A stretch of DNA of 64,000 bases, taken from positions 186,001 through 250,000 of the IMG/VR virus record IMGVR_UViG_3300023179_000009; one strand, written 5' to 3'. The notes under the pieces were generated by a model. It ran no database searches, was not told the DNA's origin, and saw only the letters and a program-made list of their open reading frames with translations. This document shows, one piece after another, positions 28,710 through 64,000 of this stretch. The first letter of the stretch is position 1. Every line of letters begins with the position of its first letter. The position numbers were made by a program, and so were the translations under genes.

Positions 28710-29093
28710 ATGAAAAGTTTTAATGAATATAAATCGGGAAATAGCATTGGTTCTTTTTTTGGAAAATCATTCGCTGTAAGGCAAAATGCTCATATTTTGC
28801 ATTTATCTTCCAAAAGTTATGCAGAACACAAGGCTTTAGGTTCATTTTACGAGCAACTAACAGACCTTACAGACCAGTTGATTGAAACCTATCAAGGTCA
28901 ATATGGCTTGGTTGAAGTTGATGTAGCTGTTTCAAAAGAAAAAAATGCAGTTTCTCTTTTGAACGATTTTGCCGAGGATACCATGAATTCTCGTGATTTG
29001 TTTGATAAAAAAGATACTCATTTACACAACATTTTAGATGAAATATTGAGTTTAACTTATCAAACTCTTTATAAATTAAAATTTCTCAAATAA
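28710..29093 (+). CDS. ferritin/Dps-like four-helix protein (DUF5856-like)
   Basis: H..HL...SYAEHKALG.FY...D..IETYQG; YKLKFLK; MKSFNEY start. Confidence 0.75.
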   Translation: MKSFNEYKSGNSIGSFFGKSFAVRQNAHILHLSSKSYAEHKALGSFYEQLTDLTDQLIETYQGQYGLVEVDVAVSKEKNAVSLLNDFAEDTMNSRDLFDKKDTHLHNILDEILSLTYQTLYKLKFLK

Positions 29094-30027
29094 CGTGTAG
29101 GCCATTTGTGAATTTCATTAATTCATAATGACCTTTTTCATTTTTTATCCATTCAAGATAATCAACATTATCTAATAAACTAAATCTTTTGTTTTCAAAA
29201 TAATCGAGATTTTTTTCACCAAAAATAGCAACAAGATCCTGTTTGCTTAATATTTTTGTAATGTTTTCATAGAATTCTTGAACCATTAGACACAACAATC
29301 CTCTTGAGTGAGTTTCGTCGCAAGTTGGACTAGGAACGTAAGATCCGTTTCCGTGAAAAACCTTTAAGTTATTAACTTTGCATTGGCTCAAATTCCTACT
29401 CGTTGAGTGTTCGTCCACCGAAATTAGGTTGAAAAACTCAGGATGTTTATTCTTCATGTATCCTAAAACCATTTCATCCCAAACTTCATACCAATCATCA
29501 TATCCAATATATTTTTTCATGGACTGTCTGGTTTCTTTTGATTGTATGGCATCAATTGTATATTTTTTAAATAAATCAAAGAATTGTTGGTATTTTTTTT
29601 CATTTGGATTGAAATAAAAATAGCCTGTGTTCCATCCATCGTAACAAAAGCGATCCCTAGTTTTTTCTAATGGCAGTGGGTTTTTTAAAAAGAATACATC
29701 CGAATCAACATAAATCACATCACCTACATAATTTTGGTTTTCGCACCAATTGTGGATATCAAAAATTCTTGAAAGGTGTTTGTAGCCCTTCACAAAATTT
29801 GAATATTGTTCCAGATAAAAATTAGTTTTAACTACTTGAAAATTTAATTTTTCTTGCAAATAACCCCATCTATGAGGCCGTTCGGGGCTGCAATCTAAAA
29901 CTACAATATCTACATCAGAAACGCTTCGTAGTGTGGCTATCGAAGGAACCACACTGGTTCTTAAATTTTTATAAGGATCGGGTTCGTGATCTAGTGACCA
30001 ACAATGGTAAATTGCTGTTGTTTTCAC
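29086..30027 (-). CDS. GT-A fold nucleotide-sugar transferase
   Basis: YVDSDVFF, NTGYFY, DE, H. Confidence 0.7.
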   Translation of the reverse strand: MKTTAIYHCWSLDHEPDPYKNLRTSVVPSIATLRSVSDVDIVVLDCSPERPHRWGYLQEKLNFQVVKTNFYLEQYSNFVKGYKHLSRIFDIHNWCENQNYVGDVIYVDSDVFFLKNPLPLEKTRDRFCYDGWNTGYFYFNPNEKKYQQFFDLFKKYTIDAIQSKETRQSMKKYIGYDDWYEVWDEMVLGYMKNKHPEFFNLISVDEHSTSRNLSQCKVNNLKVFHGNGSYVPSPTCDETHSRGLLCLMVQEFYENITKILSKQDLVAIFGEKNLDYFENKRFSLLDNVDYLEWIKNEKGHYELMKFTNGLHVI

Positions 30028-30806
30028 ATTAACTTTCTATGATTTTCTATTTCTTCCTTAAACCAATCGGGATATTCAATATTCCATTTCCTACAGTACC
30101 TGATTCCATTATTTATAAATAAGCGTTTTTGATTTGTTTTGCCGTATGTTTGAGATGGGTGCCATAAGTGCAATTCGATTTCATCTCTAAAAATTGACTT
30201 TACTCCAATTTCTTTCATTTTGTTGGTCATGTCGCTATCTGCCCAACCATATCCAACATACCCTTCATCCATCATGTCAGCTTCAAAAAAATCATCACGC
30301 CAAAAGGCCGTGTTGCCAGACCACATGTTTCTTACGCCAATGTGGTTTTCTTCACTTCTAAATTCATCGTTGTATTCAAAAGACTCATTTGTTATTTCTT
30401 CGTCGTTTGCAGTTTTGGTTAGTTTTTTCATACACTTACAAGTGATACAAATTTTTGGTTTTATTTCATTTTCTACATTTTTAAAATAATCTTTTGGAAG
30501 AATTCTATCACTTTCTAGAACTATAACTTTGTTTAAAGAACAATTTCTTACCCCTACATTTATCATTTTGGCAAGAATCATTTCATTTTCTTCCATATTA
30601 AAGTGTTTGTTGACTTTAAATTCACCCGACAGATCGGATAGTTCTTTTGTTTGATTGTTTACTAAAAACTCTATTGAGTCTTGACACACAGTCACCAACT
30701 CAGAACCTTTGATGATTTCGTTATGATTTTTTGTTAAAAATCTCAGTGTTTGCAAAAGATTATCAAATCTTGCTGTGTGGAATGGGATTATAAAAGAAAT
30801 GTTCAT
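30024..30806 (-). CDS. GT2/GT7-like glycosyltransferase
   Basis: ISFIIPF, LESDRIL, DEGYVGYGWADSD, HLWH. Confidence 0.8.
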   Translation of the reverse strand: MNISFIIPFHTARFDNLLQTLRFLTKNHNEIIKGSELVTVCQDSIEFLVNNQTKELSDLSGEFKVNKHFNMEENEMILAKMINVGVRNCSLNKVIVLESDRILPKDYFKNVENEIKPKICITCKCMKKLTKTANDEEITNESFEYNDEFRSEENHIGVRNMWSGNTAFWRDDFFEADMMDEGYVGYGWADSDMTNKMKEIGVKSIFRDEIELHLWHPSQTYGKTNQKRLFINNGIRYCRKWNIEYPDWFKEEIENHRKLM

Positions 30807-30851
30807 TTGAATTCGGTAGCGTGTGTTTAATTGACTACAAATATATATTTT

Positions 30852-32264: not shown

Positions 32265-32903
32265 ATGAAAATTGCAATAATGCAACCTTATTTTTTCCCC
32301 TATATAGGTTATTTTGAATTAATCAAGAGTGTTGATATTTTTGTTTTTTTGAATGATGTTCAATTTACAAAAAGAGGATGGATCAACAGAAATAGAATAA
32401 GGTCTTTGCATAAAGAAAACGAAAATATAGTTATACCAGTGAAGAGCCACAAACAAAAAACCAATATTAGCGAAATAACGCCTGCTTGCTCAAATTGGAA
32501 TGCTCATATATACAAGAAGATAATTTGCACTTATGGAAATAAGAATAAAATATTTTTAAATTATTTTTTGTCTCTTTCGGGCCACGCAAAACTAAAAGAT
32601 ATTCTTTGTGATTCAATAACTTGGACATCTCGCTATTTGGGATTAAACACTATCTTTGAAAACTCAGAAAACATATCAAAAGATTCGGGTTTTAAAAAAT
32701 TAATTGAGATTTGCAAGCATTTTAATTGTAATCATTACATCAATGCCTGTGGCGGAATCAATCTTTACAATAGAGAAGATTTTGAAAAAGAAGGCGTGTT
32801 TTTAGAATTTTTAGAGCCTACTAAATTTAGCAATAAACTTTCTATAATAGATTTGATATTAACACAAGAAGAAGAAACCAAATTATGGCTCAAGAAGTCC
32901 TAA
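32265..32903 (+). CDS. WbqC-family protein
   Basis: IMQPYFFPYIGYF, DDVQ-like NDVQF, GWINRNRI, YINACGG..LY, LSIID. Confidence 0.9.
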   Translation: MKIAIMQPYFFPYIGYFELIKSVDIFVFLNDVQFTKRGWINRNRIRSLHKENENIVIPVKSHKQKTNISEITPACSNWNAHIYKKIICTYGNKNKIFLNYFLSLSGHAKLKDILCDSITWTSRYLGLNTIFENSENISKDSGFKKLIEICKHFNCNHYINACGGINLYNREDFEKEGVFLEFLEPTKFSNKLSIIDLILTQEEETKLWLKKS

Positions 32904-33523
32904 TATTCGGCACAGAAGACACATCGTCATTGGCCAGTTTTTATTTAAAAAATGATTCTCAGTACAAGCCTGTGGCTTTTTGTGTTGACGGTGATTTTTT
33001 AAAAGAAACTAACTTTGAAGGTCTTCCGGTTGTTTCTTTTGAGGAAGTAGATAAACAATTTCCAAATAGTGAATTTAAATTTTTTGCTTCAATATATGAC
33101 AATCAACTTAGGTCAAAAAAAAGCAATGAAATTAAACAAAAGGGATATGAATTGATCTCATATGTTAGCAGCAAATCCTCTGTATTTTCTCCCGTAGGCG
33201 AAAATTGTTTCATTATGGAAGACAATACAATTCAGCCTTTTGTTAAGGTTGGCAACAACATTATTATGTGGTCTGGAAATCACATAGGACACCATTCTGT
33301 AATTGAGGATAATAATTTTTTATCCTCGCACGTTGTTGTGTGCGGCCATTGCCATATTAAATCTTTTTGTTGGATAGGCGTCAATTCTTCAATCAAAGAT
33401 CACATTGTTTTAGAAGAAGGAACATTTGTTGCTATGTCTTCTATGGTTACAAAAAACACAAAACCCTACAAAAAGTATACGGGAGTTCCAGCCAAAGAGT
33501 ATGGCGATAATTATAACCAGTAG
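32885..33523 (+). CDS. NeuD/PglD-type sugar O/N-acyltransferase (hexapeptide repeat)
   Basis: IGHHSVIED, hexapeptide repeats, GVPAK. Confidence 0.88.
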   Translation: MAQEVLIFGTEDTSSLASFYLKNDSQYKPVAFCVDGDFLKETNFEGLPVVSFEEVDKQFPNSEFKFFASIYDNQLRSKKSNEIKQKGYELISYVSSKSSVFSPVGENCFIMEDNTIQPFVKVGNNIIMWSGNHIGHHSVIEDNNFLSSHVVVCGHCHIKSFCWIGVNSSIKDHIVLEEGTFVAMSSMVTKNTKPYKKYTGVPAKEYGDNYNQ

Positions 33524-33905
33524 GGGGTTGAATTCTTTATTTGTTGCAAAAATAATTTCAACAAATTTAAATATTCCCATTAAATTTATCGAAGATGATC
33601 CAAAAATAGATCAATATGATGAATTTTTTTTTGTTGTTTCCAATAGAGGCGATGAAGAGTTACCGGAGTGCTTTGAGAATTTTTTAAATAATTTGATTAC
33701 TTTAAATAAAAAGTATTACATTTGCGAAATAGGAAATTATTTTGGTTTTGAATATGAATTTTTTGGTAGTAGAAAAATAGTTGATTTTATTTTAAAAAGA
33801 TTAGGCTGGCAAGAAGTCTCCTCTCTGTCAGTCGATTCCATGCCAGCAATCGATGAAGAAAGATTGATTGATTGGATCGATCAAATTAAAAAGGATTTTC
33901 TATGA
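33501..33905 (+). CDS. flavodoxin-like protein
   Basis: SRGLNS..VA, VSNRGDEELP, IGNYFG pattern. Confidence 0.65.
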   Translation: MAIIITSRGLNSLFVAKIISTNLNIPIKFIEDDPKIDQYDEFFFVVSNRGDEELPECFENFLNNLITLNKKYYICEIGNYFGFEYEFFGSRKIVDFILKRLGWQEVSSLSVDSMPAIDEERLIDWIDQIKKDFL

Positions 33906-34603
33906 AATTAATTATCGAAGTGAATTGCAATAATAAAATAGGCAAAAAAATAAAAAAATTTTTGCATGATTATAAAGTTGTCATTATTCGAAATTCGCCA
34001 ACCCACGACAGTTTTTGGGCCGAACAAGCCTCCGAAATTGGGAAATTAGTTCCTATGAAGGAGGATATAAAAACAGGAAACAAAACGGGAGAATTTTGGA
34101 CCGATATTAAATATGATGCCAAGCTATCGCATACTTTTTCTCACTCTAACACACGCCAACCTTTACACACAGATGGTTCTTATGAATCACTTGCTCCTAA
34201 TGTTACTTTTTTCTTTTGTCTAAAGCCCGCTAAAGTGGGAGGATCTACTACTTGTTTGGATTTAGATCTTTTAAAAAAATGTTTAAAAATAGAAAAGCCG
34301 GACCTGCTTGAAAAATTAAAAGCAACTGAGATACTTTTTTCAAAAGGAAATGATTTTAAAACAAGTAAAATTATAAATGGAAAGAAATGTAATTGGAATT
34401 ATTTTAGAGCAGCCAAAAGCGATTTAACGGAAGAGTTTCACATTTATCTAGAGCAAAGAATAGTACAAATGGGTGTTTTAACTAATATCAATCTTAAAAA
34501 AGGCGATGCTGTCTTTTTTAATGATGAGTTAATTCTTCATGGAAGAAATGCTTTTATAGGTGATCGTTGGTTGAAAAAAGGAGGGTTGACATGGAGTGGT
34601 TAA
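33902..34603 (+). CDS. TauD/TfdA-family 2OG-Fe(II) dioxygenase
   Basis: PLHTDGSY, GGST, GDAVFFND..LHGR.AF...R. Confidence 0.85.
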   Translation: MKLIIEVNCNNKIGKKIKKFLHDYKVVIIRNSPTHDSFWAEQASEIGKLVPMKEDIKTGNKTGEFWTDIKYDAKLSHTFSHSNTRQPLHTDGSYESLAPNVTFFFCLKPAKVGGSTTCLDLDLLKKCLKIEKPDLLEKLKATEILFSKGNDFKTSKIINGKKCNWNYFRAAKSDLTEEFHIYLEQRIVQMGVLTNINLKKGDAVFFNDELILHGRNAFIGDRWLKKGGLTWSG

Positions 34604-35391
34604 AGAACTCAGATCTAAGTTTCTTTAATACGGATAATCCTTTTGAAAACGACATACGCCACCTCCCAAATAAACACGAAATAGTTACAAAATTTGCTGA
34701 TCTAGATTATTTAAAAACAATTAACTTAAGAAAATGTAGATTAAGTCACCTCCCTGTTTTTAAAAGTAAACAAATTGAGTTTCTAGATTTAAGCTGCAAT
34801 AATTTAAGTGTTTTCCCAGAGTGGGTGTTGGGTTTAAAAAATTTAAAGTATTTAAACTTGGGTTCAAATTTTTTTGAACATTTGCCAAATTTAGAACATT
34901 TACCTTTAGAGACTTTGAAATTACATAAAAACAAGTTTTCTTATTTACAAATTCCTAAAACTATAAAGTTTTTAAATCTTTACCTAAACAATTTTTTAGA
35001 TATACCAGATATAACCCATTTAAAAAATTTGGAATTTTTTTCATTTGGTGTAACTAAAATCACAAGACTACCAGACTGGGTTTGTGATTTTAAAAACTTA
35101 AAGTGGTTGTCTTTGGTTGTAAATGATATAGAATACCTACCTGAAAATTTTTGTAATTTGCAAAATTTGGTCGGTTTGCGGCTCGCAAAAAACAAGTTAA
35201 GAGAATTACCAAATAATATTGGTTTTTGTAAAAGTTTAAAAGAAATTACCCTTTACTCTAATTGTATTAGTTGTTTACCAGATTCTTTTTATCAACTAAA
35301 TTTAGAAAAACTTAATTTATCTAAAAATTATTTAATTGATAAAAATAAAATAATAAATAAATTTTCGAATATAAATTTTTTTTCCTGTTAG
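34591..35391 (+). CDS. leucine-rich repeat protein
   Basis: About 9 LxxLxLxxNxLxxLP repeats. Confidence 0.9.
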   Translation: MEWLKNSDLSFFNTDNPFENDIRHLPNKHEIVTKFADLDYLKTINLRKCRLSHLPVFKSKQIEFLDLSCNNLSVFPEWVLGLKNLKYLNLGSNFFEHLPNLEHLPLETLKLHKNKFSYLQIPKTIKFLNLYLNNFLDIPDITHLKNLEFFSFGVTKITRLPDWVCDFKNLKWLSLVVNDIEYLPENFCNLQNLVGLRLAKNKLRELPNNIGFCKSLKEITLYSNCISCLPDSFYQLNLEKLNLSKNYLIDKNKIINKFSNINFFSC

Positions 35392-35399
35392 GGATCCTT

Positions 35400-35990
35400 A
35401 TGTCGATAGCTTATAAAGTGGTTCGTGATTTTGAAGAAGCCATGGCAGAATACGTCGGCAGCAAATATGCTGTTGCGGTGGATAGCTGCACCAATGCTTT
35501 GTTTTTATGTTGTTATTACTTAAAAGTTCAACAAGTTACCATTCCATCTAGAACGTATATCTCGGTCCCCTGTTCTATTATTCATGCAGGAGGCTCAGTT
35601 TTTTTTGAAGACATTAAATGGATTGGAAGTTATCAATTAAAGCCATACCCGATTTATGATAGTGCTTGTAAATTATCAAGAGGCATGTACGAATCGGGAA
35701 CTTTTCAATGTGTGTCTTTTAGTCCAAATAAAATTTTGAATATAGGCAAAGGCGGTATGATATTCACCGATGATGAAATTGCAAGAGATTGGTTTAAACT
35801 TGCTAGGTATGAAGGTAGAGAAGAATTATCTTTGATGGAACAAAATACTTTTGAGGTTATTGGCTGGAATATGTATATGACACCAGAGCAAGGCGCAAGA
35901 GGTTTAATTTTGTCAACATTTTTAAAAGATGAAAACATAAAGAAGCCCGATTACCCAGACCTGTCTTTGAGATTTAGACCTAAGAAATAA
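35400..35990 (+). CDS. DegT/DnrJ/EryC1/StrS aminotransferase (short form)
   Basis: AVAVDSCTNAL, DSA, SFSPNKILNIGKGGMI. Confidence 0.85.
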   Translation: MSIAYKVVRDFEEAMAEYVGSKYAVAVDSCTNALFLCCYYLKVQQVTIPSRTYISVPCSIIHAGGSVFFEDIKWIGSYQLKPYPIYDSACKLSRGMYESGTFQCVSFSPNKILNIGKGGMIFTDDEIARDWFKLARYEGREELSLMEQNTFEVIGWNMYMTPEQGARGLILSTFLKDENIKKPDYPDLSLRFRPKK

Positions 35991-36863
35991 TCAACCCTCA
36001 GCCTCGGCTAAACCTATGCCCGTTTTCCCAAATCCGTTTCCATTATAAAATAAATATTTCCCACACATAGCAGTGTAGCAGACCATCTTCGAGTCCCAAC
36101 CATTTTGCGATTTTTCTAAACCTTTTAAAGATTCGTTCATAATATTCCATTTTTTACCGCAGGTAGACTCAGCATATCCTAAACGATAACTTTTGTTTGG
36201 GTTTTTTTTATAATCTTTGGAGTTTCTATAAGAAAAAATCATTTTATATTTGTTTTTTTGTTGCCAAACCATAGGCCAGCCGATGGCACCCATTTCTTTT
36301 GAGTAGTTTATACAAGGATCTGAAAATCTTTTCCAATAAAATCCATCTTGAGATTCAGCATATCTGATTAGGTATATCGGATCATTTTTAATCCATCCGG
36401 TGCAAGAACAATACCACATTTTGTATATGTGTTTTTTAAAATCATAAATAACACAAGGGCTAGTACAAAAATAAGGTTCATCAATGTTCCTGTCCATAAC
36501 GGGTGCTTCTTTTTTAATCCACTTTTTATTTTGATACTCAGCAACGCCTATTGATAAATGATAGGGTGGAGAAATTTTTTTATTCCAACCTATTAGATAC
36601 ATTAGTTTTTTATCGCTGGATTCAACGATGCATCTTGCGGCGTGACCGTCATGATCAAAACCATTACTTCCCAATTCAAATAACGGCCCAGAGATGTTTT
36701 TTTTAATAATTTTTGGATTTTTTTTACACAACTCAATCTTGTATATTCTCGATTTATTATTCTTTATTTTAGAGAAATAAAGAATAATTTCTTTTTTATT
36801 TATATCAATAGTTGGGTAGCGTGCTTGCCCTCTATAAACTAAACCTATTTTTTTATAATTCAT
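35991..36863 (-). CDS. five-bladed beta-propeller glycoside hydrolase-like protein
   Basis: YKMWYCS, IRYAESQDG..W, YRLGYAES, FYNGNGFGKTGIGLA. Confidence 0.75.
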   Translation of the reverse strand: MNYKKIGLVYRGQARYPTIDINKKEIILYFSKIKNNKSRIYKIELCKKNPKIIKKNISGPLFELGSNGFDHDGHAARCIVESSDKKLMYLIGWNKKISPPYHLSIGVAEYQNKKWIKKEAPVMDRNIDEPYFCTSPCVIYDFKKHIYKMWYCSCTGWIKNDPIYLIRYAESQDGFYWKRFSDPCINYSKEMGAIGWPMVWQQKNKYKMIFSYRNSKDYKKNPNKSYRLGYAESTCGKKWNIMNESLKGLEKSQNGWDSKMVCYTAMCGKYLFYNGNGFGKTGIGLAEAEG

Positions 36864-38454: not shown

Positions 38455-38463
38455 ATATAATAT

Positions 38464-43861: not shown

Positions 43862-43864
43862 CTA

Positions 43865-48027: not shown

Positions 48028-48147
48028 ACATTGTATATAGTGTGCCAGAACTGATTTTTGAACCGAATTTTAGGGGAATCGTTGAAAAAGACATGGGTTC
48101 TTACTAAATTATGACTATACGGCGATTCATCCCGCTACCCTAAAGAG

Positions 48148-48198: not shown

Positions 48199-48243
48199 TT
48201 TCTACGAAAGTAGGGGCGTTCTCGCCACAGGAAAGGTAAAAAG

Positions 48244-49044: not shown

Positions 49045-49057
49045 TAGGATCAAAAAA

Positions 49058-51560: not shown

Positions 51561-51599
51561 GTAATATATAGACAAACTTCGTTGAATTAGAGGCAAAAA

Positions 51600-56022: not shown

Positions 56023-56767
56023 TATCATAGTGCCGTTTTACGGTCAATATGACAAAGTAATGAAACTGATCGATAGCCTTTTTAGGTTGACTAGAAGTAA
56101 TTATTATCAACTTATTCTAGTAGACGATTGTTCACCCAACCCAGATTTTATAAGAAATATAGATTTAAATGCTCAAAAAAATTCACAAAGGTTGCGACAA
56201 AGAAATGTTGTAAGGGCAATAAGAACCGAGGAGCAAAAAGGCTTTGCTGGTGCTTGCAAGGTCGGTTTTGAAGCTGGTGAAAGTCCATATGTTTGTTTTT
56301 TAAATTCCGACTGCATTATAGAAGACGCTGGTTGGTTAAAAAACATGGGTGAAAGTTTGCTAAAATTAAAGTCGGAAGGAGTTCGTGTCGTTTCGGCTGT
56401 GACCAACAATCCTGTTGGCGGTGATATATCCCAAAAAGGCGAAAGATTCGTTCGAGAGGAAAACGATGTGATTCTTAAAGACGATAGTTTTTTAAGTTTA
56501 TTTTGCTTTATGTGCCATAGAGAGTTGTTTTCTAAAATTGATGGTTTTATTAAGGAATATCCTTTTGGTTATTATGAAGACGAAGAATTCGCAGCACGAT
56601 TAAAAAAATATAGTTTTAAACAAGCGGTTTGTAGAAGTGCTTATGTTTATCATGAAGGACAAGCAACAGTTCATCAGATATGGAAGTCGCATCCAACAGC
56701 AAGAAAAATTATGGAAGAAGACAACCGAAAAAGGTGCATAGAAGACATGAAATTACTCAAATCTTAG
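55958..56767 (+). CDS. GT2 glycosyltransferase
   Basis: DIIVP, LVDDCS, GFAGAC, FLNSD, YYEDEE. Confidence 0.88.
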   Translation: MAKSNHVARPMNDVSLFNSQVDIIVPFYGQYDKVMKLIDSLFRLTRSNYYQLILVDDCSPNPDFIRNIDLNAQKNSQRLRQRNVVRAIRTEEQKGFAGACKVGFEAGESPYVCFLNSDCIIEDAGWLKNMGESLLKLKSEGVRVVSAVTNNPVGGDISQKGERFVREENDVILKDDSFLSLFCFMCHRELFSKIDGFIKEYPFGYYEDEEFAARLKKYSFKQAVCRSAYVYHEGQATVHQIWKSHPTARKIMEEDNRKRCIEDMKLLKS

Positions 56768-57318: not shown

Positions 57319-58788
57319 ATGCAATCGAAAATTAATCGCAACGATTCGGCCTCAAACAAGTTCAGCCTTATTCCGCTATCGGAAATAGTTATCGTGGAAA
57401 GACCAGCGGAAGGCGAAGAAAATGAAAAACTGTTCTTCAATCCACGTGGTCCGAGTTCTTTTACTCCGGATCGAATGATGCAACTTCAGTATTCAATCCG
57501 CACAGACGGCATTCAACAACCTCCGATTGTAAGATTAAATGAAGATTCTTATGAATTGATCGCTGGCGAAAGAAGGATTCGTTCATGCCAGAGCATCGTA
57601 GAGAGTGATTTGCCATGTTTTGATGAAGATAATCCTCGTCGTGATTCTTACGATAAAGGAGATATTGTTCTTTATAAAGGTCGCTTCGGCACTGTTGTTA
57701 AAGAATTGAGTGATGAAATCATCGTGGATTTCGATGATGATTGCATTGGATCTCAAGAAAGAAAAAATTGTCCGATTGAAGATGTTTTTGCCACGGTTTC
57801 TGGCAGCGAACTGTATGAGAACGTTCCCTGCAAAATTGTAACCGACTGTTCTGATCAAAGAGCGTTGAGACTCGCTTTTACAGAAAATGACCAGTCGGAG
57901 CCTTTGACTATTGCCGAAGAAGTTGCTTTAGTTGAGCGGCTTTCAAGGTCCGGGTTAAAGCAAGAAGAAATTGCCGAACTGCTTGGCTCAAACATAACTT
58001 GGGTGTGCCAAACAGGCAATTTTAGATCTCAATTGCCAAATAAAGCATTTGATAAACTTCTTAAAGGCGAAATGACTCGTCATGTTGCCGTGAATTTTTT
58101 GAGTTACTCTCCTGACGATAGAGAAGAATTATTTGAAGCAACACTTGAGGCAGAAACCCAAGAGACTCAAGAAAAAATTGCTGAACTGACAGAGGAGAAG
58201 GAACGCCTGGAGGACGAAGAAGAAATAGCAATATCGGATGCAATCAAGGCCGATGATGATGGCGACGAAAAAACCGCCAGGAAACTTCGTAAGAAAGCCG
58301 CTGGTCTTGCTTCGAAAGCAACAAAGGCCGCAGGCCGTCTTGAACGTGTGAAGCGTGAAAAGGGCAACATCAAGCAAGGTCACGTTAAGTCTGGGGCCAA
58401 AGCGAAAGGGTTGCAGCCCAAGAAGATCAAGTCGTTAGACAAAAACGATATTGAGGCCATCTTTGTTGATGGAATTCAAGAGTTCCTTGAGGGAGAAGGC
58501 GTTTGTGGAATAACCGGAGAAACAGTTCCAGCAGAATATGCTGCTATTGTTTTATCAACAGCAAAAGCGATTATTGCTGGCATCTCCGATCCTGTTCACC
58601 CAATTCGTGAATATATGTGCGAAATTGGTGTTTGGGAATTGCCCAAGCGTAAAAAGAAAAAGAAGGAAGAAATATCTTTTGATGAAGATGATATCGAAGA
58701 AGATGAAACCATTAGCGAAGATGATGATTTTGAAAATCACTTGAAGAGTTACGATGATGATGAAGACGAGCAAATTGATGATGAGTGA
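57319..58788 (+). CDS. ParB/RepB/Spo0J-family protein with insertion and acidic tail
   Basis: NPR, SIRTDGIQQPPIV, LIAGERRIR, LAFTEN, HTH (GLKQEEIAELLG). Confidence 0.88.
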   Translation: MQSKINRNDSASNKFSLIPLSEIVIVERPAEGEENEKLFFNPRGPSSFTPDRMMQLQYSIRTDGIQQPPIVRLNEDSYELIAGERRIRSCQSIVESDLPCFDEDNPRRDSYDKGDIVLYKGRFGTVVKELSDEIIVDFDDDCIGSQERKNCPIEDVFATVSGSELYENVPCKIVTDCSDQRALRLAFTENDQSEPLTIAEEVALVERLSRSGLKQEEIAELLGSNITWVCQTGNFRSQLPNKAFDKLLKGEMTRHVAVNFLSYSPDDREELFEATLEAETQETQEKIAELTEEKERLEDEEEIAISDAIKADDDGDEKTARKLRKKAAGLASKATKAAGRLERVKREKGNIKQGHVKSGAKAKGLQPKKIKSLDKNDIEAIFVDGIQEFLEGEGVCGITGETVPAEYAAIVLSTAKAIIAGISDPVHPIREYMCEIGVWELPKRKKKKKEEISFDEDDIEEDETISEDDDFENHLKSYDDDEDEQIDDE

Positions 58789-58811
58789 TTCTCTCTCAAA
58801 TTAATAACATG

Positions 58812-58848
58812 AACGGCTCCGATGAAAACATCGGAGCCGTTTTTTTTT
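58812..58848 (+). terminator. Rho-independent terminator
   Basis: AACGGCTCCGATG/CATCGGAGCCGTT + T run. Confidence 0.9.
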
Positions 58849-58865
58849 AAATTTTAATATATATT

Positions 58866-59153
58866 ATGATGCTAATTATGTGTCCTTATTGCGGCTATCA
58901 CTTATCTAAACCATTAACAAATGGAATATGTTCTTGTGTCAATTGTAAAAGAGTGTTTGATAGTTCCAGACTCAACTCCCTCCTCTCTGCTAGTTGGGTT
59001 GTGAAAAGAAAAAATATCACCAACCCAATAGATCTTGCAAATCGATGCAAAATTTCAGAGGATGATGCCAATCTTGTGATCGATTTAGTAAATGATCAAT
59101 GTTACGACTTTCAAGAATTTTTAAAAATTCTTGAAAACATGGTTGAGCAATAA
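58866..59153 (+). CDS. zinc-ribbon hypothetical protein
   Basis: CPYC...CVNC. Confidence 0.65.
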   Translation: MMLIMCPYCGYHLSKPLTNGICSCVNCKRVFDSSRLNSLLSASWVVKRKNITNPIDLANRCKISEDDANLVIDLVNDQCYDFQEFLKILENMVEQ

Positions 59154-59198
59154 TTATTTTTGTGTTATGATTTTGTCTCTTTATTTTCGTTAGATAAA

Positions 59199-60263
59199 AT
59201 GACCGAGCAACAAGAAAATTCTCCAAGATATGTTCGACCAATAAAAATATTTGGTTTAAATGCAACAAAGAATTATGCAAAAAAAGTTGCAAATCATTTG
59301 CACCTAGATCTGACCCCCATCACAGAAAAATATTATGATGACGGTGAGCCTTACGTAAAAAGTGGAATTGAATATAGCGACAGTCCGGTGGGGAATGTTC
59401 GTGGACACGATGTTTTTGTTATTCAATCTCTTTATAGCGACAACTCTGAATCGATTAGCGACAAGATGATGAAATTGTGTATATTTTGCGGAAGTTTAAA
59501 AGATGCTTCTTCCCATGAAGTTATTCCAATAATTCCTCATCTTGGTTGGGCAAGACAAGATAGAAAAACAGAGAGCAGAGCGCCAATTGCCACAAAATAC
59601 ATTGCTAGAATTTTGGAATCAGTTGGCATAAGTCGAGTTTTACTCTTTGAGTGCCACAATATAGCAGCCGAGCAAAATGCGTTTAATGTTCCAATAGATA
59701 ATCTAGAAGCAAAAAATTTAATTGCCGATTGGTGTGCCTCAGAATTAATAAAAGAAAATAAAACAAAAAATATCAAAGTCCTCAGTCCCGACAGCGGGGC
59801 TTTAGGCAGATGTGAACGATTTAGAAATTCGCTTCTCAAAAAATTACGTGATAGAAATGTTATGTTGGATGATATTGAAATTGTTATTTTTGATAAATTG
59901 AGAATAAAGGGCCAAGTTAAAGGTGGAAGAATAGTTGGAGATGTTAAGGGAGCAGATGTTATAGCCTTTGATGACATGATATCTACTGGATCAACTATGG
60001 GCAAAGCCTCAAAAGCAGTTCAAGAGAATGGTGGTAAAATTTGGTCTATTTGTGCTACACATGGATTATTTTGCGGCAAAGCTAATGATGTATTGAGAGA
60101 AATAGATGCAAAAGTAGTTGTTACCGATACTGTTGAGCCTTTTAGGCTGACAGATGAGAATAAAAGCAAACTTTATATTGTAGATACTTCAAAAATGGTA
60201 GCCGATGCCGTCAAAAGAATTCATAACGGCACCGGCTCCATAAGCGAACTTCTTCGCACTTAA
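59199..60263 (+). CDS. prs: ribose-phosphate pyrophosphokinase family protein
   Basis: DGE, VRGHDVFVIQS, ARQDRK, SPDSG, DDMISTGST, ATHGLF, VTDT. Confidence 0.92.
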   Translation: MTEQQENSPRYVRPIKIFGLNATKNYAKKVANHLHLDLTPITEKYYDDGEPYVKSGIEYSDSPVGNVRGHDVFVIQSLYSDNSESISDKMMKLCIFCGSLKDASSHEVIPIIPHLGWARQDRKTESRAPIATKYIARILESVGISRVLLFECHNIAAEQNAFNVPIDNLEAKNLIADWCASELIKENKTKNIKVLSPDSGALGRCERFRNSLLKKLRDRNVMLDDIEIVIFDKLRIKGQVKGGRIVGDVKGADVIAFDDMISTGSTMGKASKAVQENGGKIWSICATHGLFCGKANDVLREIDAKVVVTDTVEPFRLTDENKSKLYIVDTSKMVADAVKRIHNGTGSISELLRT

Positions 60264-60466
60264 TTCGTTGTCAAATCACTCAGAGTGTTAAGATTTGAAG
60301 TGTTTTTGTCAACTAATTCACTTCTTAGAATGGTAACAGAGTCTGAGGCTTGAATGCCTAACCTGACTTTGTTTGAATCAATTCTAACCACGGTCAGTTC
60401 GACTTGTTCTTTTTCGTTCAATTTCAAAAGGATTTTTTCATCCCTCTTTCTGGATAGGACTAGCAA
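60260..60466 (-). CDS. csrA: carbon storage regulator CsrA/RsmA
   Basis: MLVLSRK..EKI...VVRI..NKVRLGIQA...ILRSEL; GGGAGG SD, TTG start. Confidence 0.92.
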   Translation of the reverse strand: MLVLSRKRDEKILLKLNEKEQVELTVVRIDSNKVRLGIQASDSVTILRSELVDKNTSNLNTLSDLTTN

Positions 60467-61342: not shown

Positions 61343-62167
61343 ATGATTAATGCTCAAGAATCACTTCCAAAAATTAGTTGCTTGATGGTCACAGCCAATA
61401 ATCGTTTTGATTATTTTAAAAAAAGTGTGCAATGTTATGTTGATCAAACTTACCCAAACCGTGAATTAGTTATAGTAACCGAAGCACCAAGAGATTATCA
61501 AAAAAAAATTAAAGATTATCTCTCAGGGAGGGATGATGTTCATTTTGTTTTTTTAAATGGATGGTATTCCTTGGGTGCCTTAAGAAACATTTCTATGTCT
61601 CTTTGTTATGGAGATGTTTTTGTTCAATGGGACGATGATGATTTTAATGCCCCAGAAAGATTAGCCGTTCAATATAGTTACTTGTCTAGACATCCAAAGG
61701 CACGTGTGTGTTTCCTGTCGGATCAACTTCATTATTACTTCAATTCCGGTTATTTATTTTGGGAAGATTGGGCACAATATTGTTCTAATGGTATTAAAAA
61801 ATGCAGTTTGATACCAGGAACTATTATGGCTTATAGGAGACATTTTCATAATAAATATCCATCTGCCGGGAGTTACTGCTCCGCTGGCGAAGATTCTGTT
61901 TTAACTACAACTCTTTGCGAGAATGATATTGATAATGATCAAGTTGTTTTAATGTCCAACTATGGATATATGCAAATGTACACATTTCATGGGAATAATG
62001 TTTGGGATGAAGAACACCATTTAAAAATATCAAAAAACAGATCGTTGCCTGTGAGTTATATCAATAGAAACAGACAAAGAATCTGCGATACAATAAATTA
62101 TTTGGAACTTGAAGGAACAATAAAAGTTATGGGCCGAGAGGGCTTGGCATTCACTCATGAGGTTTAA
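61343..62167 (+). CDS. GT2 glycosyltransferase
   Basis: ISCLMVT, QTYPN.EL, LGALRN, QWDDDD, GED. Confidence 0.88.
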   Translation: MINAQESLPKISCLMVTANNRFDYFKKSVQCYVDQTYPNRELVIVTEAPRDYQKKIKDYLSGRDDVHFVFLNGWYSLGALRNISMSLCYGDVFVQWDDDDFNAPERLAVQYSYLSRHPKARVCFLSDQLHYYFNSGYLFWEDWAQYCSNGIKKCSLIPGTIMAYRRHFHNKYPSAGSYCSAGEDSVLTTTLCENDIDNDQVVLMSNYGYMQMYTFHGNNVWDEEHHLKISKNRSLPVSYINRNRQRICDTINYLELEGTIKVMGREGLAFTHEV

Positions 62168-62169
62168 AA

Positions 62170-62988
62170 ATGATTTCAGGAAAACTGCCATTAATTTCTT
62201 GTGTTTGTGTTACCAAAGATCGTTTTGAATTATTAAAAAAATCAATTTTTTGTTATTTAAATCAAAATTACCAAAATAAAAATTTAATCATATTGAGTCA
62301 AAGCAATGATGACACTAATAAAAAAATAGAAAAATACATAAAAGATTTATCAAGAGAAGATATTCTTTTTCTTGCTGCTCCAACTATGTTGACGTTAGGG
62401 GCCATGAGAAACACATCTATTGAATTGGCCACCGGCGAAATAATTTGTCAATGGGACGATGACGATTTGTATCACCCCAACAGACTGACTAATCAATATA
62501 AGTGTTTAAAAAGCGATAATAGAAATGTTGCTTCTTTGTATTCAAATTTTTTAAAGTATTTTGCCAATTCAAAAGAAGTATATTGGTGTGATTGGTTAAA
62601 CGAATCAGAGTACTCCCACAGATTTTTGTGTGGTTCGGTGATGTTTTACAAATCTCTTTTTCATATGTGGGAAAATTTTTATCCTGAGCGTGGTGCTCAG
62701 AGTTGTTGTGAGGAAGATTTAAATGTTCTTGAGAAGTTGATGTTAAAAGGGTCCATAGCCCCAGTCTTGGATGGCAATGAATATGTTTATGTTTATCACG
62801 GCGTTAACACCTATGATTTAGATCACCACAAATTAACCTTGGACATTAGATGGGGTAAAAAAGTTTATACAAAAGAAGATTTATTAAAAAAGCAAGATTT
62901 GATTGAGGAAACTTTTGATTTGATACAAATGGACGATATTGTTAAAATTAAGAGTTTAGGAGAAGTTGCTTTTACTTACACAATATGA
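62170..62988 (+). CDS. GT2 glycosyltransferase (tandem paralog)
   Basis: ISCVCVT, LGAMRN, QWDDDD, EED, YHG.NT. Confidence 0.88.
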   Translation: MISGKLPLISCVCVTKDRFELLKKSIFCYLNQNYQNKNLIILSQSNDDTNKKIEKYIKDLSREDILFLAAPTMLTLGAMRNTSIELATGEIICQWDDDDLYHPNRLTNQYKCLKSDNRNVASLYSNFLKYFANSKEVYWCDWLNESEYSHRFLCGSVMFYKSLFHMWENFYPERGAQSCCEEDLNVLEKLMLKGSIAPVLDGNEYVYVYHGVNTYDLDHHKLTLDIRWGKKVYTKEDLLKKQDLIEETFDLIQMDDIVKIKSLGEVAFTYTI

Positions 62989-64000
62989 AATTCGAACAAA
63001 AGTACCCCACGGCTTTATCAAACGAGAGATTTGAATTTGAATACTCTTATGTGACCAAAAGCCCAAAACTAGGACAGTGTCGTTGGTGTTCTTCTTTTAC
63101 CAAATGGATAGATGTTCTTTTTCAAGTTAACGTTTGTAGCGAAGAGTGCAACGCTGAGATGTGGCACCGCTATAGGAATGATCAAAAATTAAATGGTACT
63201 TATAAAAATTTTGAGGATCATTTTGAACAAGTAAAAAAAGAATTAAAATTGGGAGAAAAGGCCACGGATGATTGGAAAGACATATTAATTGTTGTTCATG
63301 ATCAACTTGACTATATCAAAGATTGCGTTGATTCGGTACAAAAATATACAAAAAATTACCATTTGTTTATTTGGGACAATGCATCCGGCAAAGAGACTCA
63401 AGAATATATACAAAATTTATTGTTAAAATATGATCCAAACAAAGATAAGCATTATAAATTAACAACTATAAGAAGAGAGAAAAATGTTGGATTTGTGGTT
63501 CCAAATAATGAAATGATTGCTCTCGGGGAAAGTCCCTATATCATCCTACTAAATTCTGATACCAAAGTTTTTGAAAATTGGGACAATACCATGATAGCAT
63601 TTTTAAAAAACAACCCGGAATATGCCCAGGTTGGCTATTGGGGAGGACACCTTAATGCTGATGGGCGTGGATTTGGCGGGGCGAATGGAGAACGTGTTGA
63701 CTATATCCCAGGTTGGTGCTTTTGCATACCACGTGAGACCTACGATCAATTTGGTTTGTTCGATGAACATCTCAAATTCGCTTATTGCGAAGACTCTGAT
63801 TTTTCTTTGAGACTGAAAGAAGGTGGAAAAAAGATTTATTCACTTTACGCTCCACTTGTTCACCACTATCAAAACAAAACTGTAAAACAAGTCGAAAAAG
63901 AAGGTGAATTGGATCTTCAAGCAACTTTTGATCACAATCATTCCTACTTTAAAAATCGTTGGAAAGAATATTTGTCTAAAAATCGAGTTCTTTTGGATCA
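62985..64000 (+). CDS. GT2 glycosyltransferase with N-terminal Cys4 domain (runs off right edge; not in ORF track)
   Basis: Hand translation: CRWC...CSEEC, DILIVVHDQL, IWDNAS, NVGF..PNN, LLNSD, YCEDSDFSLR. Confidence 0.85.
   Translation, partial: MKFEQKYPTALSNERFEFEYSYVTKSPKLGQCRWCSSFTKWIDVLFQVNVCSEECNAEMWHRYRNDQKLNGTYKNFEDHFEQVKKELKLGEKATDDWKDILIVVHDQLDYIKDCVDSVQKYTKNYHLFIWDNASGKETQEYIQNLLLKYDPNKDKHYKLTTIRREKNVGFVVPNNEMIALGESPYIILLNSDTKVFENWDNTMIAFLKNNPEYAQVGYWGGHLNADGRGFGGANGERVDYIPGWCFCIPRETYDQFGLFDEHLKFAYCEDSDFSLRLKEGGKKIYSLYAPLVHHYQNKTVKQVEKEGELDLQATFDHNHSYFKNRWKEYLSKNRVLLD

What the first reader, a model, noticed from the sequence alone, without database searches (positions are those of the whole stretch)
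29086..64000. Phage-encoded glycan synthesis and tailoring arsenal of about 35 kb
Seen: about 15 GT-like genes (GT2, GT7-like, GT8-like, GT47 exostosin, fucosyltransferase-like), 3 sulfotransferase-like genes, 4 methyltransferases, a carbamoyltransferase, an acyltransferase, an aminotransferase, 2 dioxygenases and a GH-like propeller, plus fcl, rmlC and a GT9-like gene elsewhere. Genes switch strand often, and no flippase, Wzy/Wzz, ABC exporter or initiating phosphoglycosyltransferase is visible; the GTs lack obvious TM segments. Inference: this is not a host LPS/capsule locus but cytoplasmic decoration of virion proteins (or DNA) with a sulfated, methylated, carbamoylated glycan, reminiscent of giant-virus glycosylation.
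Basis: partly seen in the sequence, partly recalled or inferred. Interest (0 to 1): 0.72.

Follow-up and report, generated by a model that had tools for sequence, protein, structure and literature searches.

The report
Megaphage glycan-building gene island
A 459-kb T4-like freshwater megaphage carries about 30 soluble sugar-building and sugar-tailoring genes and no export machinery; half of them lie in a block that keeps its gene order in huge phages whose DNA composition differs widely, so the glycan is probably made for the phage itself, most likely its particle.

Summary
Window 29086-64000 carries 13 supported and 3 probable glycosyltransferase-like genes, 2 sulfotransferases, 4 methyltransferases, a carbamoyltransferase, a hexapeptide acyltransferase, a short DegT-type aminotransferase, WbqC, TauD and PhyH dioxygenases and a GH130-like propeller. 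The record is a tailed phage of 458,813 bp, with gp23-type capsid protein, portal and large terminase. It has no polytopic membrane protein, priming phosphoglycosyltransferase, Wzx or ABC-2 permease. All island genes are under purifying selection against a relative 86-89% identical in DNA (dN/dS 0.01-0.26).

The island has two parts. Part A (29086-44767, GC 0.28) recurs with shuffled gene order; its core cassette occurs in about 36 of 44 uncultivated viral loci. Part B (44821-64007, GC 0.36) is a 22-gene block, collinear in six or more other large contigs of up to 686 kb whose local GC runs 0.42-0.64.

That host-independent conservation favours an acceptor belonging to the phage, most likely virion proteins. 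This is inferred, not shown. Building on host lipid carriers remains a serious rival. DNA glycosylation is unlikely. I rate it a new variant of a known kind.

The parts
1..1240 (+). Outlying sugar-nucleotide trio: the C-terminal part of an SDR epimerase/dehydratase (cut by the window start, ends at 265), RmlC-type dTDP-sugar isomerase (262-789) and a GNAT acetyltransferase (758-1240).
   Evidence: PF01370 E 1.7e-46; PF00908 E 2.4e-49; PF00583 E 1.8e-10; dN/dS 0.09-0.14.
29086..30806 (-). Start of Part A. A GT-A-like ORF (29086-30027, DSD motif), whose paralogue lies beside the second carbamoyltransferase beyond the window, and a GT7C-like gene (30024-30806).
   Evidence: dN/dS 0.07-0.08.
32265..33523 (+). 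WbqC-family gene (32265-32903) and hexapeptide acyltransferase (32885-33523). Both belong to the core cassette.
   Evidence: PF08889 E 1.3e-46 and PF00132 E 1e-12. They co-occur with the propeller gene in 36-38 of 44 viral loci.
33504..35391 (+). Possible flavodoxin-like ORF (33504-33905), TauD-family dioxygenase (33902-34603) and an LRR protein (34567-35391) that overlaps the end of TauD.
   Evidence: Flavodoxin E 0.035, weak. TauD E 5.5e-20 and LRR_8 E 4.7e-18. The TauD-LRR pair is also adjacent in L122.
35400..35990 (+). Short DegT/DnrJ/EryC1-type aminotransferase of 196 aa. It lacks profile positions 95-161 and the C-terminal domain.
   Evidence: It is conserved at about 200-215 aa in L121, L122 and other viral loci. 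dN/dS 0.06, so it is not a pseudogene.
35991..36863 (-). GH130-like five-bladed propeller. It is the marker gene of the core cassette.
   Evidence: 545 homologues, some carrying PF04041. In bacteria it sits between the hexapeptide transferase and DegT inside a Wzz/Wzm/Wzt locus. No hit in 50,697 GenBank phage records.
36896..37507 (+). Sulfotransferase (Sulfotransfer_2 family).
   Evidence: E 1.9e-9. PAPS-binding motifs PKTGGT and RNPWDR.
37504..38469 (-). Fucosyltransferase-like gene (NodZ/FUT8/O-FucT clan).
   Evidence: Atlas feature score 0.96, with 199-204 shared features.
38464..39934 (+). Methyltransf_24 O-methyltransferase (38464-39168) and PhyH-family dioxygenase (39140-39934).
   Evidence: PhyH is part of the core cassette in 34 of 44 loci.
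39953..40867 (+). GT47 exostosin-like glycosyltransferase.
   Evidence: PF03016 E 4.1e-19.
40910..41647 (-). ORF without a family and with a DDDD motif; possibly GT-A. The close relative G005 carries unrelated sequence here.
   Evidence: An orthologue with 53% identity lies in L121.
41651..43195 (-). NodU/CmcH-type O-carbamoyltransferase.
   Evidence: Carbam_trans_C E 1.6e-57. About 35% identical to the carbamoyltransferases of T4-like cyanophages and pelagiphage HTVC008M.
43202..44767 (-). ORF homologous to a domain of the 1730-aa multi-GT protein (43202-43861) and a GT8-like GT-A gene (43865-44767). End of Part A.
   Evidence: structure TM 0.7-0.8 to clusters carrying GT8 or Nucleotid_trans.
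44821..46595 (.). Start of the collinear Part B: sulfotransferase (44821-45582, +) and Methyltransf_23 paralogue a (45579-46595, -).
   Evidence: Collinear in L169, L173, L174, L175, L171 and L179.
46635..48235 (-). IS200/605-type element carrying only TnpB (46640-47881). It is inserted in the 44-nt spacer between two diverging block genes and is not part of the glycan system.
   Evidence: OrfB_IS605 E 6e-23. Precisely absent from G005.
48244..50907 (+). GT8-like gene (48244-49044), Methyltransf_23 paralogue b (49058-50098) and GT2 (50074-50907).
   Evidence: dN/dS 0.01-0.03. 48-74% identity in the collinear relatives.
50904..51596 (-). Fast-evolving ORF without a family, rich in charged residues. 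It keeps its position in the block.
   Evidence: (dN/dS 0.17).
51600..53136 (.). GT7C-like paralogue (51600-52472, +) and GT2 (52435-53136, -).
53158..54568 (.). Small P-loop NTPase or kinase-like ORF (53158-53628, +; Walker A motif) and Methyltransf_23 paralogue c (53603-54568, -).
54624..56767 (+). GT-A-fold protein without a Pfam family (54624-55442), a weakly VWA-like ORF (55396-56022) and GT2 (55958-56767).
   Evidence: Model pLDDT 92 with Foldseek probability 1.0 to GT-A enzymes. More than 200 homologues at 53-73% identity on contigs of up to 691 kb. Also.
57319..60466 (.). Backbone genes inside the collinear block with no obvious glycan role: ParB_N protein (57319-58788, +), zinc-ribbon ORF (58866-59153, +), PRPP-synthetase-like gene (59160-60263, +) and CsrA (60260-60466, -).
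61343..64000 (+). Three tandem GT2 genes (61343-62167, 62170-62988, and 62985 to 64007, which runs 7 bases past the window end).
   Evidence: Collinear in G011. dN/dS 0.02-0.05.

Best explanation
The region is a phage-encoded glycan assembly and tailoring system that contains only soluble enzymes. It belongs to a T4-like freshwater megaphage.

The phage takes primary nucleotide sugars from the host, because it has no sugar nucleotidyltransferase of its own. It remodels some of them with SDR and RmlC enzymes, a DegT-type aminotransferase, hexapeptide and GNAT acyltransferases, WbqC, the GH130-like propeller and 2OG dioxygenases. About 16 cytoplasmic glycosyltransferases then build the glycan stepwise. 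It is finished by O-methylation (4 methyltransferases), sulfation (2 sulfotransferases using host PAPS) and carbamoylation.

The 22-gene Part B would make a conserved inner glycan. Part A, which is low in GC and shuffled between relatives, would add lineage-specific outer residues.

I think the most likely acceptor is a protein of the phage itself, above all virion proteins glycosylated in the cytoplasm before or during assembly, as in giant viruses and mycobacteriophages.

Shown: the gene content, the phage identity, the lack of any membrane or export component, purifying selection, and conservation in relatives whose GC differs widely.

Inferred: the order of the steps, the split into inner and outer glycan, and the acceptor.
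For: - Enzyme inventory.
- Phage hallmarks.
- No TM segment in any island protein and no polytopic membrane protein in 459 kb. No Bac_transf, Wzx or ABC-2 permease, with positive controls. No NTP_transferase.
- Every island gene has dN/dS 0.01-0.26 against a relative with dS 0.2-1.3. This includes the short DegT and all ORFs without a family.
- Part B is collinear gene for gene in six or more other contigs of 239-686 kb at 35-81% protein identity. Their local GC is 0.42-0.64, against 0.36 here. A glycan system tied to the export machinery of one host would not be expected to stay intact across such a range.
- Part A recurs as a gene set in L121 and L122, and its core cassette in about 36 of 44 viral loci.
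- The structural neighbours of the new GT-A protein include the capsid-glycosylating enzyme A64R of PBCV-1 and many giant-virus GTs.
Against: - No result shows an acceptor.
- The island lies more than 130 kb from the structural genes, unlike the GT genes of mycobacteriophages.
- No Ser/Thr-rich acceptor-like protein was found.
- LR756511, whose capsid protein is 80% identical, keeps only two of the block's glycan genes and three of its backbone genes, so the block is not needed to build this kind of capsid.
- Bacterial homologues of the propeller cassette work inside a Wzm/Wzt-exported polysaccharide locus.
- The published reading of comparable jumbo-cyanophage clusters is host-surface modification (PMC7824862).
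- That the contigs of 477-686 kb are phages is inferred from synteny alone. They could not be searched for hallmark genes.
Confidence: 0.45

Rival explanations
1. Remodelling of the host envelope. The soluble phage GTs extend the host's own undecaprenyl-linked primers at the inner leaflet. The host's Wzx/Wzy or Wzm/Wzt machinery then exports the altered polysaccharide. The infected cell changes its surface, which could block superinfection, stop progeny being lost on cell debris, or deter grazers.
For: - The elongating GTs of bacterial O-antigen and capsule pathways are likewise soluble or peripheral (established knowledge).
- Bacterial homologues of the hexapeptide-propeller-DegT cassette lie in a locus with Wzz, an ABC-2 permease and a Wzt_C ATPase.
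- Part A is low in GC, shuffled between relatives and variable, as expected for surface-antigen genes.
- This is the published reading of the jumbo-cyanophage clusters (PMC7824862).
Against: - The phage has no priming, flipping, polymerising or exporting component.
- Part B stays collinear in contigs with GC 0.36-0.64, which I take to mean very different hosts with different exporters.
- Several block genes are nearly invariant (dN/dS 0.01-0.04). That does not fit an antigen arms race.
Confidence: 0.25
2. A soluble or secreted glycoconjugate. The enzymes would make an oligosaccharide or glycosylated small molecule, such as a Nod-factor-like, aminoglycoside-like or polymethylated polysaccharide, that acts inside or outside the infected cell.
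For: - The tailoring set (carbamoyl-, sulfo-, methyl-, acetyl- and fucosyl-transferases) mirrors Nod-factor decoration (established knowledge of NodU, NodH, NodS, NodL and NodZ).
- PhyH- and TauD-type dioxygenases, a DegT-type enzyme and radical SAM genes just beyond the window occur in glycoside antibiotic pathways.
- Iyer et al. proposed a secondary-metabolite role for a second cluster in cyanophages (PMC7824862).
Against: - About 16 GTs, six of them GT2, is far more than a small glycoside needs.
- No scaffold-forming enzyme such as NodC, 2-deoxy-scyllo-inosose synthase, PKS or NRPS was seen in the scanned ORFs.
- There is no exporter.
Confidence: 0.1
3. DNA hypermodification. The GTs would put glycans on modified bases of the phage genome to evade restriction and CRISPR, with the ParB_N protein and the P-loop protein as helpers.
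For: - Phage GTs related to LPS enzymes do glycosylate 5hmC (preprint 10.1101/2023.12.21.572611).
- ParB-like proteins and P-loop kinases occur in thymidine-hypermodification clusters (PMC13229309).
- A ParB_N protein and a P-loop ORF sit in Part B, next to nucleotide-metabolism genes.
Against: - The single thymidylate-synthase homologue scores as a true ThyA: 271 bits, with thymidylate synthases as best PDB matches at E 1e-58.
- No Tet_JBP match was found, though that search had no positive control.
- The only DNA methylase seen is of the N6/N4 type.
- Known DNA glycans carry one to three sugars. They do not need about 16 GTs plus sulfation and carbamoylation.
Confidence: 0.07
4. A bacterial polysaccharide locus wrongly assembled or binned into a viral contig.
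For: The enzyme families are those of bacterial surface-polysaccharide loci.
Against: - The window is the middle of a single 459-kb contig that carries terminase, portal and gp23-type capsid genes.
- The same island lies in the same place in an independently assembled relative and in other viral contigs.
- A public run holds the stretch in one contig.
Confidence: 0.01

Closest known systems
Polysaccharide (LPS/capsule) gene clusters of jumbo T4-like cyanophages, such as the 15-gene cluster of P-SSM2 and the second cluster of S-SSM6a (Iyer et al. 2021, PMC7824862)
   Same: - A T4-like phage with SDR epimerases, a cupin sugar isomerase, several GT families, O-methyltransferases, 2OG dioxygenases and NodU-like carbamoyltransferases, and no exporter.
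- The carbamoyltransferase here is about 35% identical to the cyanophage enzymes.
   Different: - About twice as many genes.
- It has sulfotransferases, GT47, a fucosyltransferase-like gene and the GH130-like cassette. These give no hits, or hits in one to four records, among 50,697 GenBank phage records, mostly other uncultured huge phages.
- It has no nucleotidyltransferase.
- Half of it is a strictly collinear block kept in contigs of widely differing GC. The cyanophage clusters are described as sporadic and polymorphic.
Autonomous glycosylation machinery of giant viruses (the capsid N-glycan enzymes of PBCV-1, such as A64R; the fibril glycan clusters of Mimivirus and the Megavirinae)
   Same: - Virus-encoded soluble GTs and sugar-nucleotide tailoring enzymes (aminotransferase, N-acetyltransferase, methyltransferases) that work in the cytoplasm without a membrane pathway.
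- Clusters conserved within a clade.
- Fold-level matches to A64R and to many giant-virus GTs.
   Different: - This is a tailed bacteriophage, not a member of the Nucleocytoviricota.
- The similarity is at the level of fold and family only (TM 0.4-0.6).
- Attachment of the glycan to the particle has not been shown here.
- As far as I know, sulfation and carbamoylation have not been described for those viral glycans (my own knowledge).
Virion glycosylation in mycobacteriophages (Freeman et al. 2023, as cited in PMC12619734)
   Same: Phage-encoded cytoplasmic GTs that decorate phage proteins.
   Different: There, one to a few GTs lie beside the structural genes and act on the C-termini of the capsid and tail-tube proteins. 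Here there are about 16 GTs more than 130 kb from the structural module, and no acceptor has been identified.
Gene clusters for glycan hypermodification of phage DNA (Pyle et al., preprint 10.1101/2023.12.21.572611; ParB-dependent T-dioxygenases, PMC13229309)
   Same: Phage GTs derived from LPS-type enzymes. ParB-like and P-loop genes lie nearby.
   Different: No 5mYOX/TET enzyme, no C5-methyltransferase and no hydroxymethylase was found. There are far more GTs and tailoring enzymes than one to three sugars require.
Bacterial O-polysaccharide loci of the ABC-transporter type
   Same: The hexapeptide transferase, GH130-like propeller and DegT cassette, the methyltransferases and the SDR enzymes occur together in such a locus in a 7.5-Mb bacterial genome.
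   Different: The phage has none of Wzz, Wzm, Wzt, a priming transferase or a ligase.

Membership tests
Bacterial surface-polysaccharide locus (Wzx/Wzy or ABC type) | Initiating phosphoglycosyltransferase (Bac_transf or WecA type) | tested here: not met
   PF02397 has no match in the genome, while the control rang in 9 of 14 genomes. No polytopic membrane protein is present, so there is no WecA/MraY type either.
Bacterial surface-polysaccharide locus (Wzx/Wzy or ABC type) | Flippase or ABC-2 exporter, polymerase, chain-length regulator | tested here: not met
   PF01943 and PF01061 have no match in this phage or in five relatives; the controls rang in 13 and 14 of 14 genomes. No protein in 459 kb has four or more TM-like segments.
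Bacterial surface-polysaccharide locus (Wzx/Wzy or ABC type) | Lies in a cellular chromosome | tested here: not met
   A single viral contig with terminase, portal and gp23-type capsid genes.
Jumbo-cyanophage polysaccharide clusters (PMC7824862) | Phage-borne cluster of SDR epimerases, a cupin isomerase and several GT families | tested here: met
Jumbo-cyanophage polysaccharide clusters (PMC7824862) | Own sugar kinase and nucleotidyltransferase ('complete complement') | tested here: not met
   NTP_transferase is absent from this genome, while the control rang in 14 of 14. The PfkB kinase was not searched for.
Jumbo-cyanophage polysaccharide clusters (PMC7824862) | Sporadic and polymorphic between related phages | tested here: inconclusive
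   Part A fits: its order is shuffled and segments are replaced. Part B does not fit: it is collinear in six or more contigs.
Giant-virus-type autonomous virion glycosylation | Virus-encoded soluble GTs and sugar-tailoring enzymes independent of a membrane pathway | tested here: met
Giant-virus-type autonomous virion glycosylation | The glycan is attached covalently to capsid or fibre proteins | not testable with these tools
   This needs virions. The scan for Ser/Thr-rich acceptors found nothing telling.
Mycobacteriophage virion glycosylation | GT genes adjacent to the structural genes whose products they modify | tested here: not met
   The island lies at genome 215-258 kb. The capsid, portal and terminase genes lie at 431-444 kb.
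Phage DNA glycan hypermodification cluster | An enzyme that makes the reactive base (TS-like hydroxymethylase, or C5-methyltransferase plus a 5mYOX/TET dioxygenase) | tested here: not met
   There is one TS homologue and it scores as ThyA. Tet_JBP has no match, but that search had no positive control. The only DNA methylase seen is of the N6/N4 type.
Carbohydrate sulfotransferases | PAPS-binding 5'-PSB and 3'-PB motifs | tested here: met
   36896-37507 has PKTGGT and RNPWDR. 44821-45582 has TGTGRCGT and VRDP.

The most novel reading that the evidence does not exclude
A clade of T4-like megaphages with genomes from about 0.24 to nearly 0.7 Mb, whose DNA spans GC 0.36-0.64, builds its own methylated and sulfated glycan coat on the virion. 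It does so in the bacterial cytoplasm, with a vertically inherited 22-gene block. Lineage-specific modules such as Part A here then add variable outer residues (N-acyl amino sugar, fucose, carbamoyl, extra sulfate). This would be a phage counterpart of the LPS core and O-antigen, and of giant-virus fibril glycans.
Probability: 0.35. Interest if true: 0.85.

Novelty: new variant of a known kind. Interest (0 to 1): 0.62.

Why it matters
Glycan gene clusters in large phages have been known since the cyanophage P-SSM2. They have been read as variable auxiliary genes that alter the host surface, and none has been tested.

Here the largest such set seen in a phage record splits in two. One part is variable. 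The other is a collinear block kept in huge-phage contigs of very different base composition. That points to a function intrinsic to the phage.

If the glycan sits on the particle, tailed phages would share with giant viruses an autonomous cytoplasmic glycosylation system, in this case with sulfation. That would bear on virion stability, adsorption, grazing and immune recognition, and on how very large virions are built.

The work also yields concrete handles for experiments:
- a new GT-A family with more than 200 members;
- a conserved short form of the DegT aminotransferase;
- a widespread viral cassette of WbqC, hexapeptide transferase, GH130-like propeller and PhyH, whose product is unknown.

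Tried and rejected
- **Other genetic codes.** None is needed. Table 11 gives 93% coding density.
- **Giant virus of eukaryotes.** I considered this because of the genome size and the Golgi-type enzyme families. It is rejected: terminase, portal and gp23-type capsid genes are present. The NCLDV capsid search found nothing, but it had no positive control.
- **Host from TnpB.** The best cellular homologues reach only 42% identity and are scattered over several phyla, so the host remains unknown.
- **Pairwise hhalign of ORFs without a family against the annotated island proteins.** It recovered only the paralogues already known (one search timed out).
- **phmmer of six such ORFs against PDB.** Nothing useful.
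- **Expression class from promoters.** TATAAATA lies within 80 nt upstream of 13 genes against 3.5 expected. Five are in the structural region and two are in or beside the island (38435 and 71845 in window coordinates). This is too sparse, and the upstream regions too AT-rich, to assign a class.
- **Transcription in nature.** Only one 170-nt contig (49704-49873) from one metatranscriptome matched. The tool itself warns that this does not show transcription.
- **Mucin-like or Ser/Thr-rich acceptor proteins.** None found.
- **Unusual strand switching as a mark of the island.** Not supported.
- **A third sulfotransferase.** Not found. The ORF at 30852-31226 has no family and is absent from the relative.
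- **Complex prediction.** I ran none, because the report claims no specific binding pair.

Full report
**What the record is.** The window is bases 186001-250000 of a single 458,813-bp contig, an IMG/VR virus record rated 91% complete by CheckV. GC is 0.349, and table 11 gives 653 ORFs at 93% coding density. Twelve tRNA genes lie outside the window. A large terminase (phrog_2, E 2.8e-45), a portal (phrog_213, E 1.5e-74) and a T4 gp23-type major capsid protein (PF07068, E 9e-87) lie at 431-444 kb. It is therefore a T4-like tailed megaphage, not a bacterial chromosome and not a giant virus of eukaryotes. The nearest GenBank record is the 595-kb uncultured phage LR756511, with 57% portal identity and 80% capsid-protein identity. 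Near-identical DNA occurs in lake and freshwater metagenomes from several studies dated 2011-2025. The host is unknown; TnpB homologues gave no clue.

**The observation.**
- six GT2 genes, GT47, and a GT7C-like gene just below the Pfam cut-off;
- two sulfotransferases, one with clear PAPS-binding motifs and one whose homologues carry Sulfotransfer_1/3/4;
- Methyltransf_24 and three paralogous Methyltransf_23 genes;
- a NodU-type carbamoyltransferase, a hexapeptide acyltransferase, WbqC, and TauD and PhyH dioxygenases;
- a DegT-type aminotransferase of only 196 aa.

Twelve ORFs had no Pfam family even at lax thresholds. Other methods placed five of them:
- 37504-38469 is fucosyltransferase-like.
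- 48244-49044 and 43865-44767 are GT8-like.
- 54624-55442 gave a model at pLDDT 92 with a GT-A fold.
- 35991-36863 belongs to a large family, some of whose members carry the GH130 domain.

Three more (29086, 40910, 43202) look GT-like only from acidic motifs and paralogy. The count is thus 13 supported and 3 probable GT-like genes, which matches 'about 15'. I could not find a third sulfotransferase. Outside the range, rmlC and an SDR epimerase cut by the window start are real and are followed by a GNAT acetyltransferase. The GT9-like hit is weak. Six of the genome's 13 GT2 matches fall in this 7.6% of the genome (P = 2e-4).

**No export machinery anywhere.** No island protein has a TM-like segment. 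No protein in the whole 459 kb has four or more such segments; the three with three are a 73-aa ORF, a 258-aa ORF and the 2705-aa giant protein. Bac_transf, Polysacc_synt (Wzx) and ABC2_membrane have no match, although the same searches rang in 9 to 14 of 14 control genomes. There is also no sugar nucleotidyltransferase, so primary nucleotide sugars must come from the host. Glycan genes also lie elsewhere in the genome. There are seven further GT2 matches, two more SDR enzymes and a full-length DegT. There is a 1730-aa protein combining GT4 and GT47 domains and a 743-aa protein combining GT1 and GT2 domains. A second carbamoyltransferase, with a paralogue of the 29086 ORF, lies just beyond the window.

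**The genes are maintained by selection.** A 177-kb IMG/VR contig (G005) is syntenic with window 26836-67138 at 86-89% nucleotide identity. Against it, every island gene has dN/dS between 0.01 and 0.26 at dS 0.2-1.3. This includes the short DegT (0.06) and all ORFs without a family. The differences between the two phages are as follows:
- A 1.6-kb element carrying only TnpB (46635-48235) is present here and absent there. It is inserted precisely in the 44-nt spacer between two diverging genes.
- 30807-31904 is extra here.
- 40835-41649 is replaced by unrelated sequence.
- The PRPP-synthetase allele is divergent (52% identity).

**The island has two parts with different histories.**

Part A (29086-44767) has GC 0.282, against 0.349 for the genome. 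Two more distant contigs (L121, L122) carry most of its genes at 37-75% identity, but in other orders. They include the LRR protein next to TauD and the short DegT. A core cassette of WbqC, hexapeptide transferase, GH130-like propeller and PhyH, often with DegT, is present in about 36 of 44 IMG/VR loci found with the propeller. The propeller has no match in 50,697 GenBank phage records. In bacteria its homologues sit between a hexapeptide transferase and DegT. In one 7.5-Mb genome this cassette lies inside a polysaccharide locus with Wzz, an ABC-2 permease and a Wzt_C ATPase.

Part B (44821-64007) has GC 0.358. It is a 22-gene block in this order: sulfotransferase, methyltransferase, GT8-like, methyltransferase, GT2, unknown, GT7C-like, GT2, P-loop, methyltransferase, new GT-A, VWA-like, GT2, small ORF, ParB_N, zinc-ribbon, PRPP synthetase, CsrA, basic protein, and three GT2 genes. 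This order is kept gene for gene at 35-81% identity in six or more other contigs of up to 686 kb. The local GC of those contigs is 0.42, 0.46, 0.48, 0.50, 0.60 and 0.64. The new GT-A family has more than 200 members at 53-73% identity, on contigs of up to 691 kb. The sulfotransferase family reaches contigs of 693 kb. The block is not universal. LR756511 keeps only the new GT-A gene, one methyltransferase and the ParB_N, PRPP-synthetase and CsrA genes.

**What it most likely does.** The chemistry is readable from the families. Host nucleotide sugars are remodelled into 6-deoxy, amino and N-acyl sugars. About 16 soluble GTs assemble them. The product is then methylated, sulfated and carbamoylated. 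The acceptor is the open question.

That argument is not sound, because bacterial elongating GTs are also soluble. A phage could build on host undecaprenyl primers and use host exporters, which is also the published view of jumbo-cyanophage clusters (PMC7824862).

What shifts my odds towards a phage-intrinsic acceptor is Part B. A block that stays collinear and nearly invariant (dN/dS 0.01-0.05 for most of its genes) in phages whose base composition spans GC 0.36-0.64 is hard to reconcile with dependence on one host's primer, flippase and ligase. It is also hard to reconcile with an antigenic arms race. Virion proteins are the most plausible constant acceptor, by analogy with giant viruses and mycobacteriophages. 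I put this at 0.45.

Several facts weigh against it. The island is far from the structural genes. No acceptor-like protein was found. A relative with an 80% identical capsid protein lacks most of the block.

**Rivals.** Host-envelope remodelling stays at 0.25. A free glycoconjugate is at 0.10.

DNA glycosylation is at 0.07, for these reasons:
- The only thymidylate-synthase homologue is a true ThyA.
- No TET/JBP dioxygenase was detected, though without a control.
- The one DNA methylase seen is of the N6/N4 type.
- Known DNA glycans have one to three sugars (preprint 10.1101/2023.12.21.572611).

The ParB_N and P-loop genes in the block recall thymidine-hypermodification clusters (PMC13229309), so this rival is not zero.

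**Novelty.** Large glycan clusters in T4-like jumbo phages are known, and the carbamoyltransferase has relatives about 35% identical in 143 phage records. Several things are new:
- the scale of the set;
- sulfotransferases, GT47, a fucosyltransferase-like gene and the GH130-like cassette, which give no hits, or hits in one to four records, among GenBank phage records, mostly other uncultured huge phages;
- above all, the split into a shuffled variable module and a collinear block kept in contigs of widely differing GC.

I file it as a new variant of a known kind, with interest 0.62.

Noticed in passing
G000:C1:260000-360000 (outside the window, downstream): The 10-mer ATACCAACTA occurs 98 times, always on the + strand and only between 260 and 360 kb. 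It usually lies 0-110 nt upstream of small + strand genes and is often followed by TAG and a GC-rich hairpin. It looks like a phage-specific promoter or regulatory signal for one gene class. None lies in the island.
   Followed up: partly
window 46635-48235; also 3761-4918; genome 25831-26994 and 455812-456978: There are four TnpB (IS605 OrfB / Cas12f-like) genes. The one at 46640-47881 is a recent, precise insertion into the 44-nt spacer between two diverging block genes. It is absent from the close relative and has a terminal hairpin (CCCACCCG...CGGGTGGG). The copy at 3761-4918 also has no orthologue in the relative.
   Followed up: partly
L002:3131-9955 (window coordinates 66131-72955, beyond the window end): Three paralogous radical SAM genes have the SPASM domain N-terminal to the radical SAM core, the reverse of the usual order. 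Two of them flank a LAGLIDADG homing endonuclease gene that the close relative lacks. The second carbamoyltransferase and a GT-like paralogue lie between the second and the third.
   Followed up: no
window 35400-35990: The DegT-type aminotransferase is only 196 aa. It matches profile positions 23-94 and 162-231 and has no C-terminal domain. This short form is conserved in 15 viral loci and is under strong purifying selection, so it is a distinct family variant and not a relic.
   Followed up: partly
window 32265-38469: Synonymous divergence from the relative G005 is 0.2-0.35 across most of this stretch (the propeller gene at 35991-36863 is an exception at 1.3), against 0.5-1.3 in most neighbouring genes. 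This suggests recent recombination between the two phage lineages. Conversely, the PRPP-synthetase gene (59160-60263) is only 52% identical between flanks that are about 95% identical.
   Followed up: no
window 60260-60466: A phage-encoded CsrA homologue (E 1.9e-16) is 59-81% identical in all relatives that carry the collinear block. It may be a tool for taking over host post-transcriptional control.
   Followed up: no
window 19572-25494: A group of RNA-related genes: an RlaP-type nucleotidyltransferase (19572-20336), an FtsJ-like methyltransferase (22610-23359) and a 720-aa protein combining an HD domain with a PolyA_pol head domain, like CCA-adding enzymes (23332-25494).
   Followed up: no
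L120 (genome 442142-443587), capsid-protein residues about 132-248: This insertion region of the gp23-type capsid protein has copies 32-39% identical inside other proteins of related phages, for example an 1107-aa protein in G002 and G003 and several ORFs in LR756511. It is a shared surface module that could be a decoration or binding domain.
   Followed up: no
G000:C1:458600-458813 (3' end of the contig): The contig ends in tandem repeats of about 63 nt. On the minus strand they encode 21-residue units rich in Gly, Ala, Ser and Thr. This is probably a repetitive fibre-like gene at which the assembly broke.
   Followed up: no
window 33902-35391: The LRR protein overlaps the 3' end of the TauD dioxygenase gene by 37 nt. 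The same pair is adjacent in the distant contig L122, and both genes also occur, apart, in L121. The conserved pairing is unexplained. The LRR could be an adaptor to a protein substrate.
   Followed up: no
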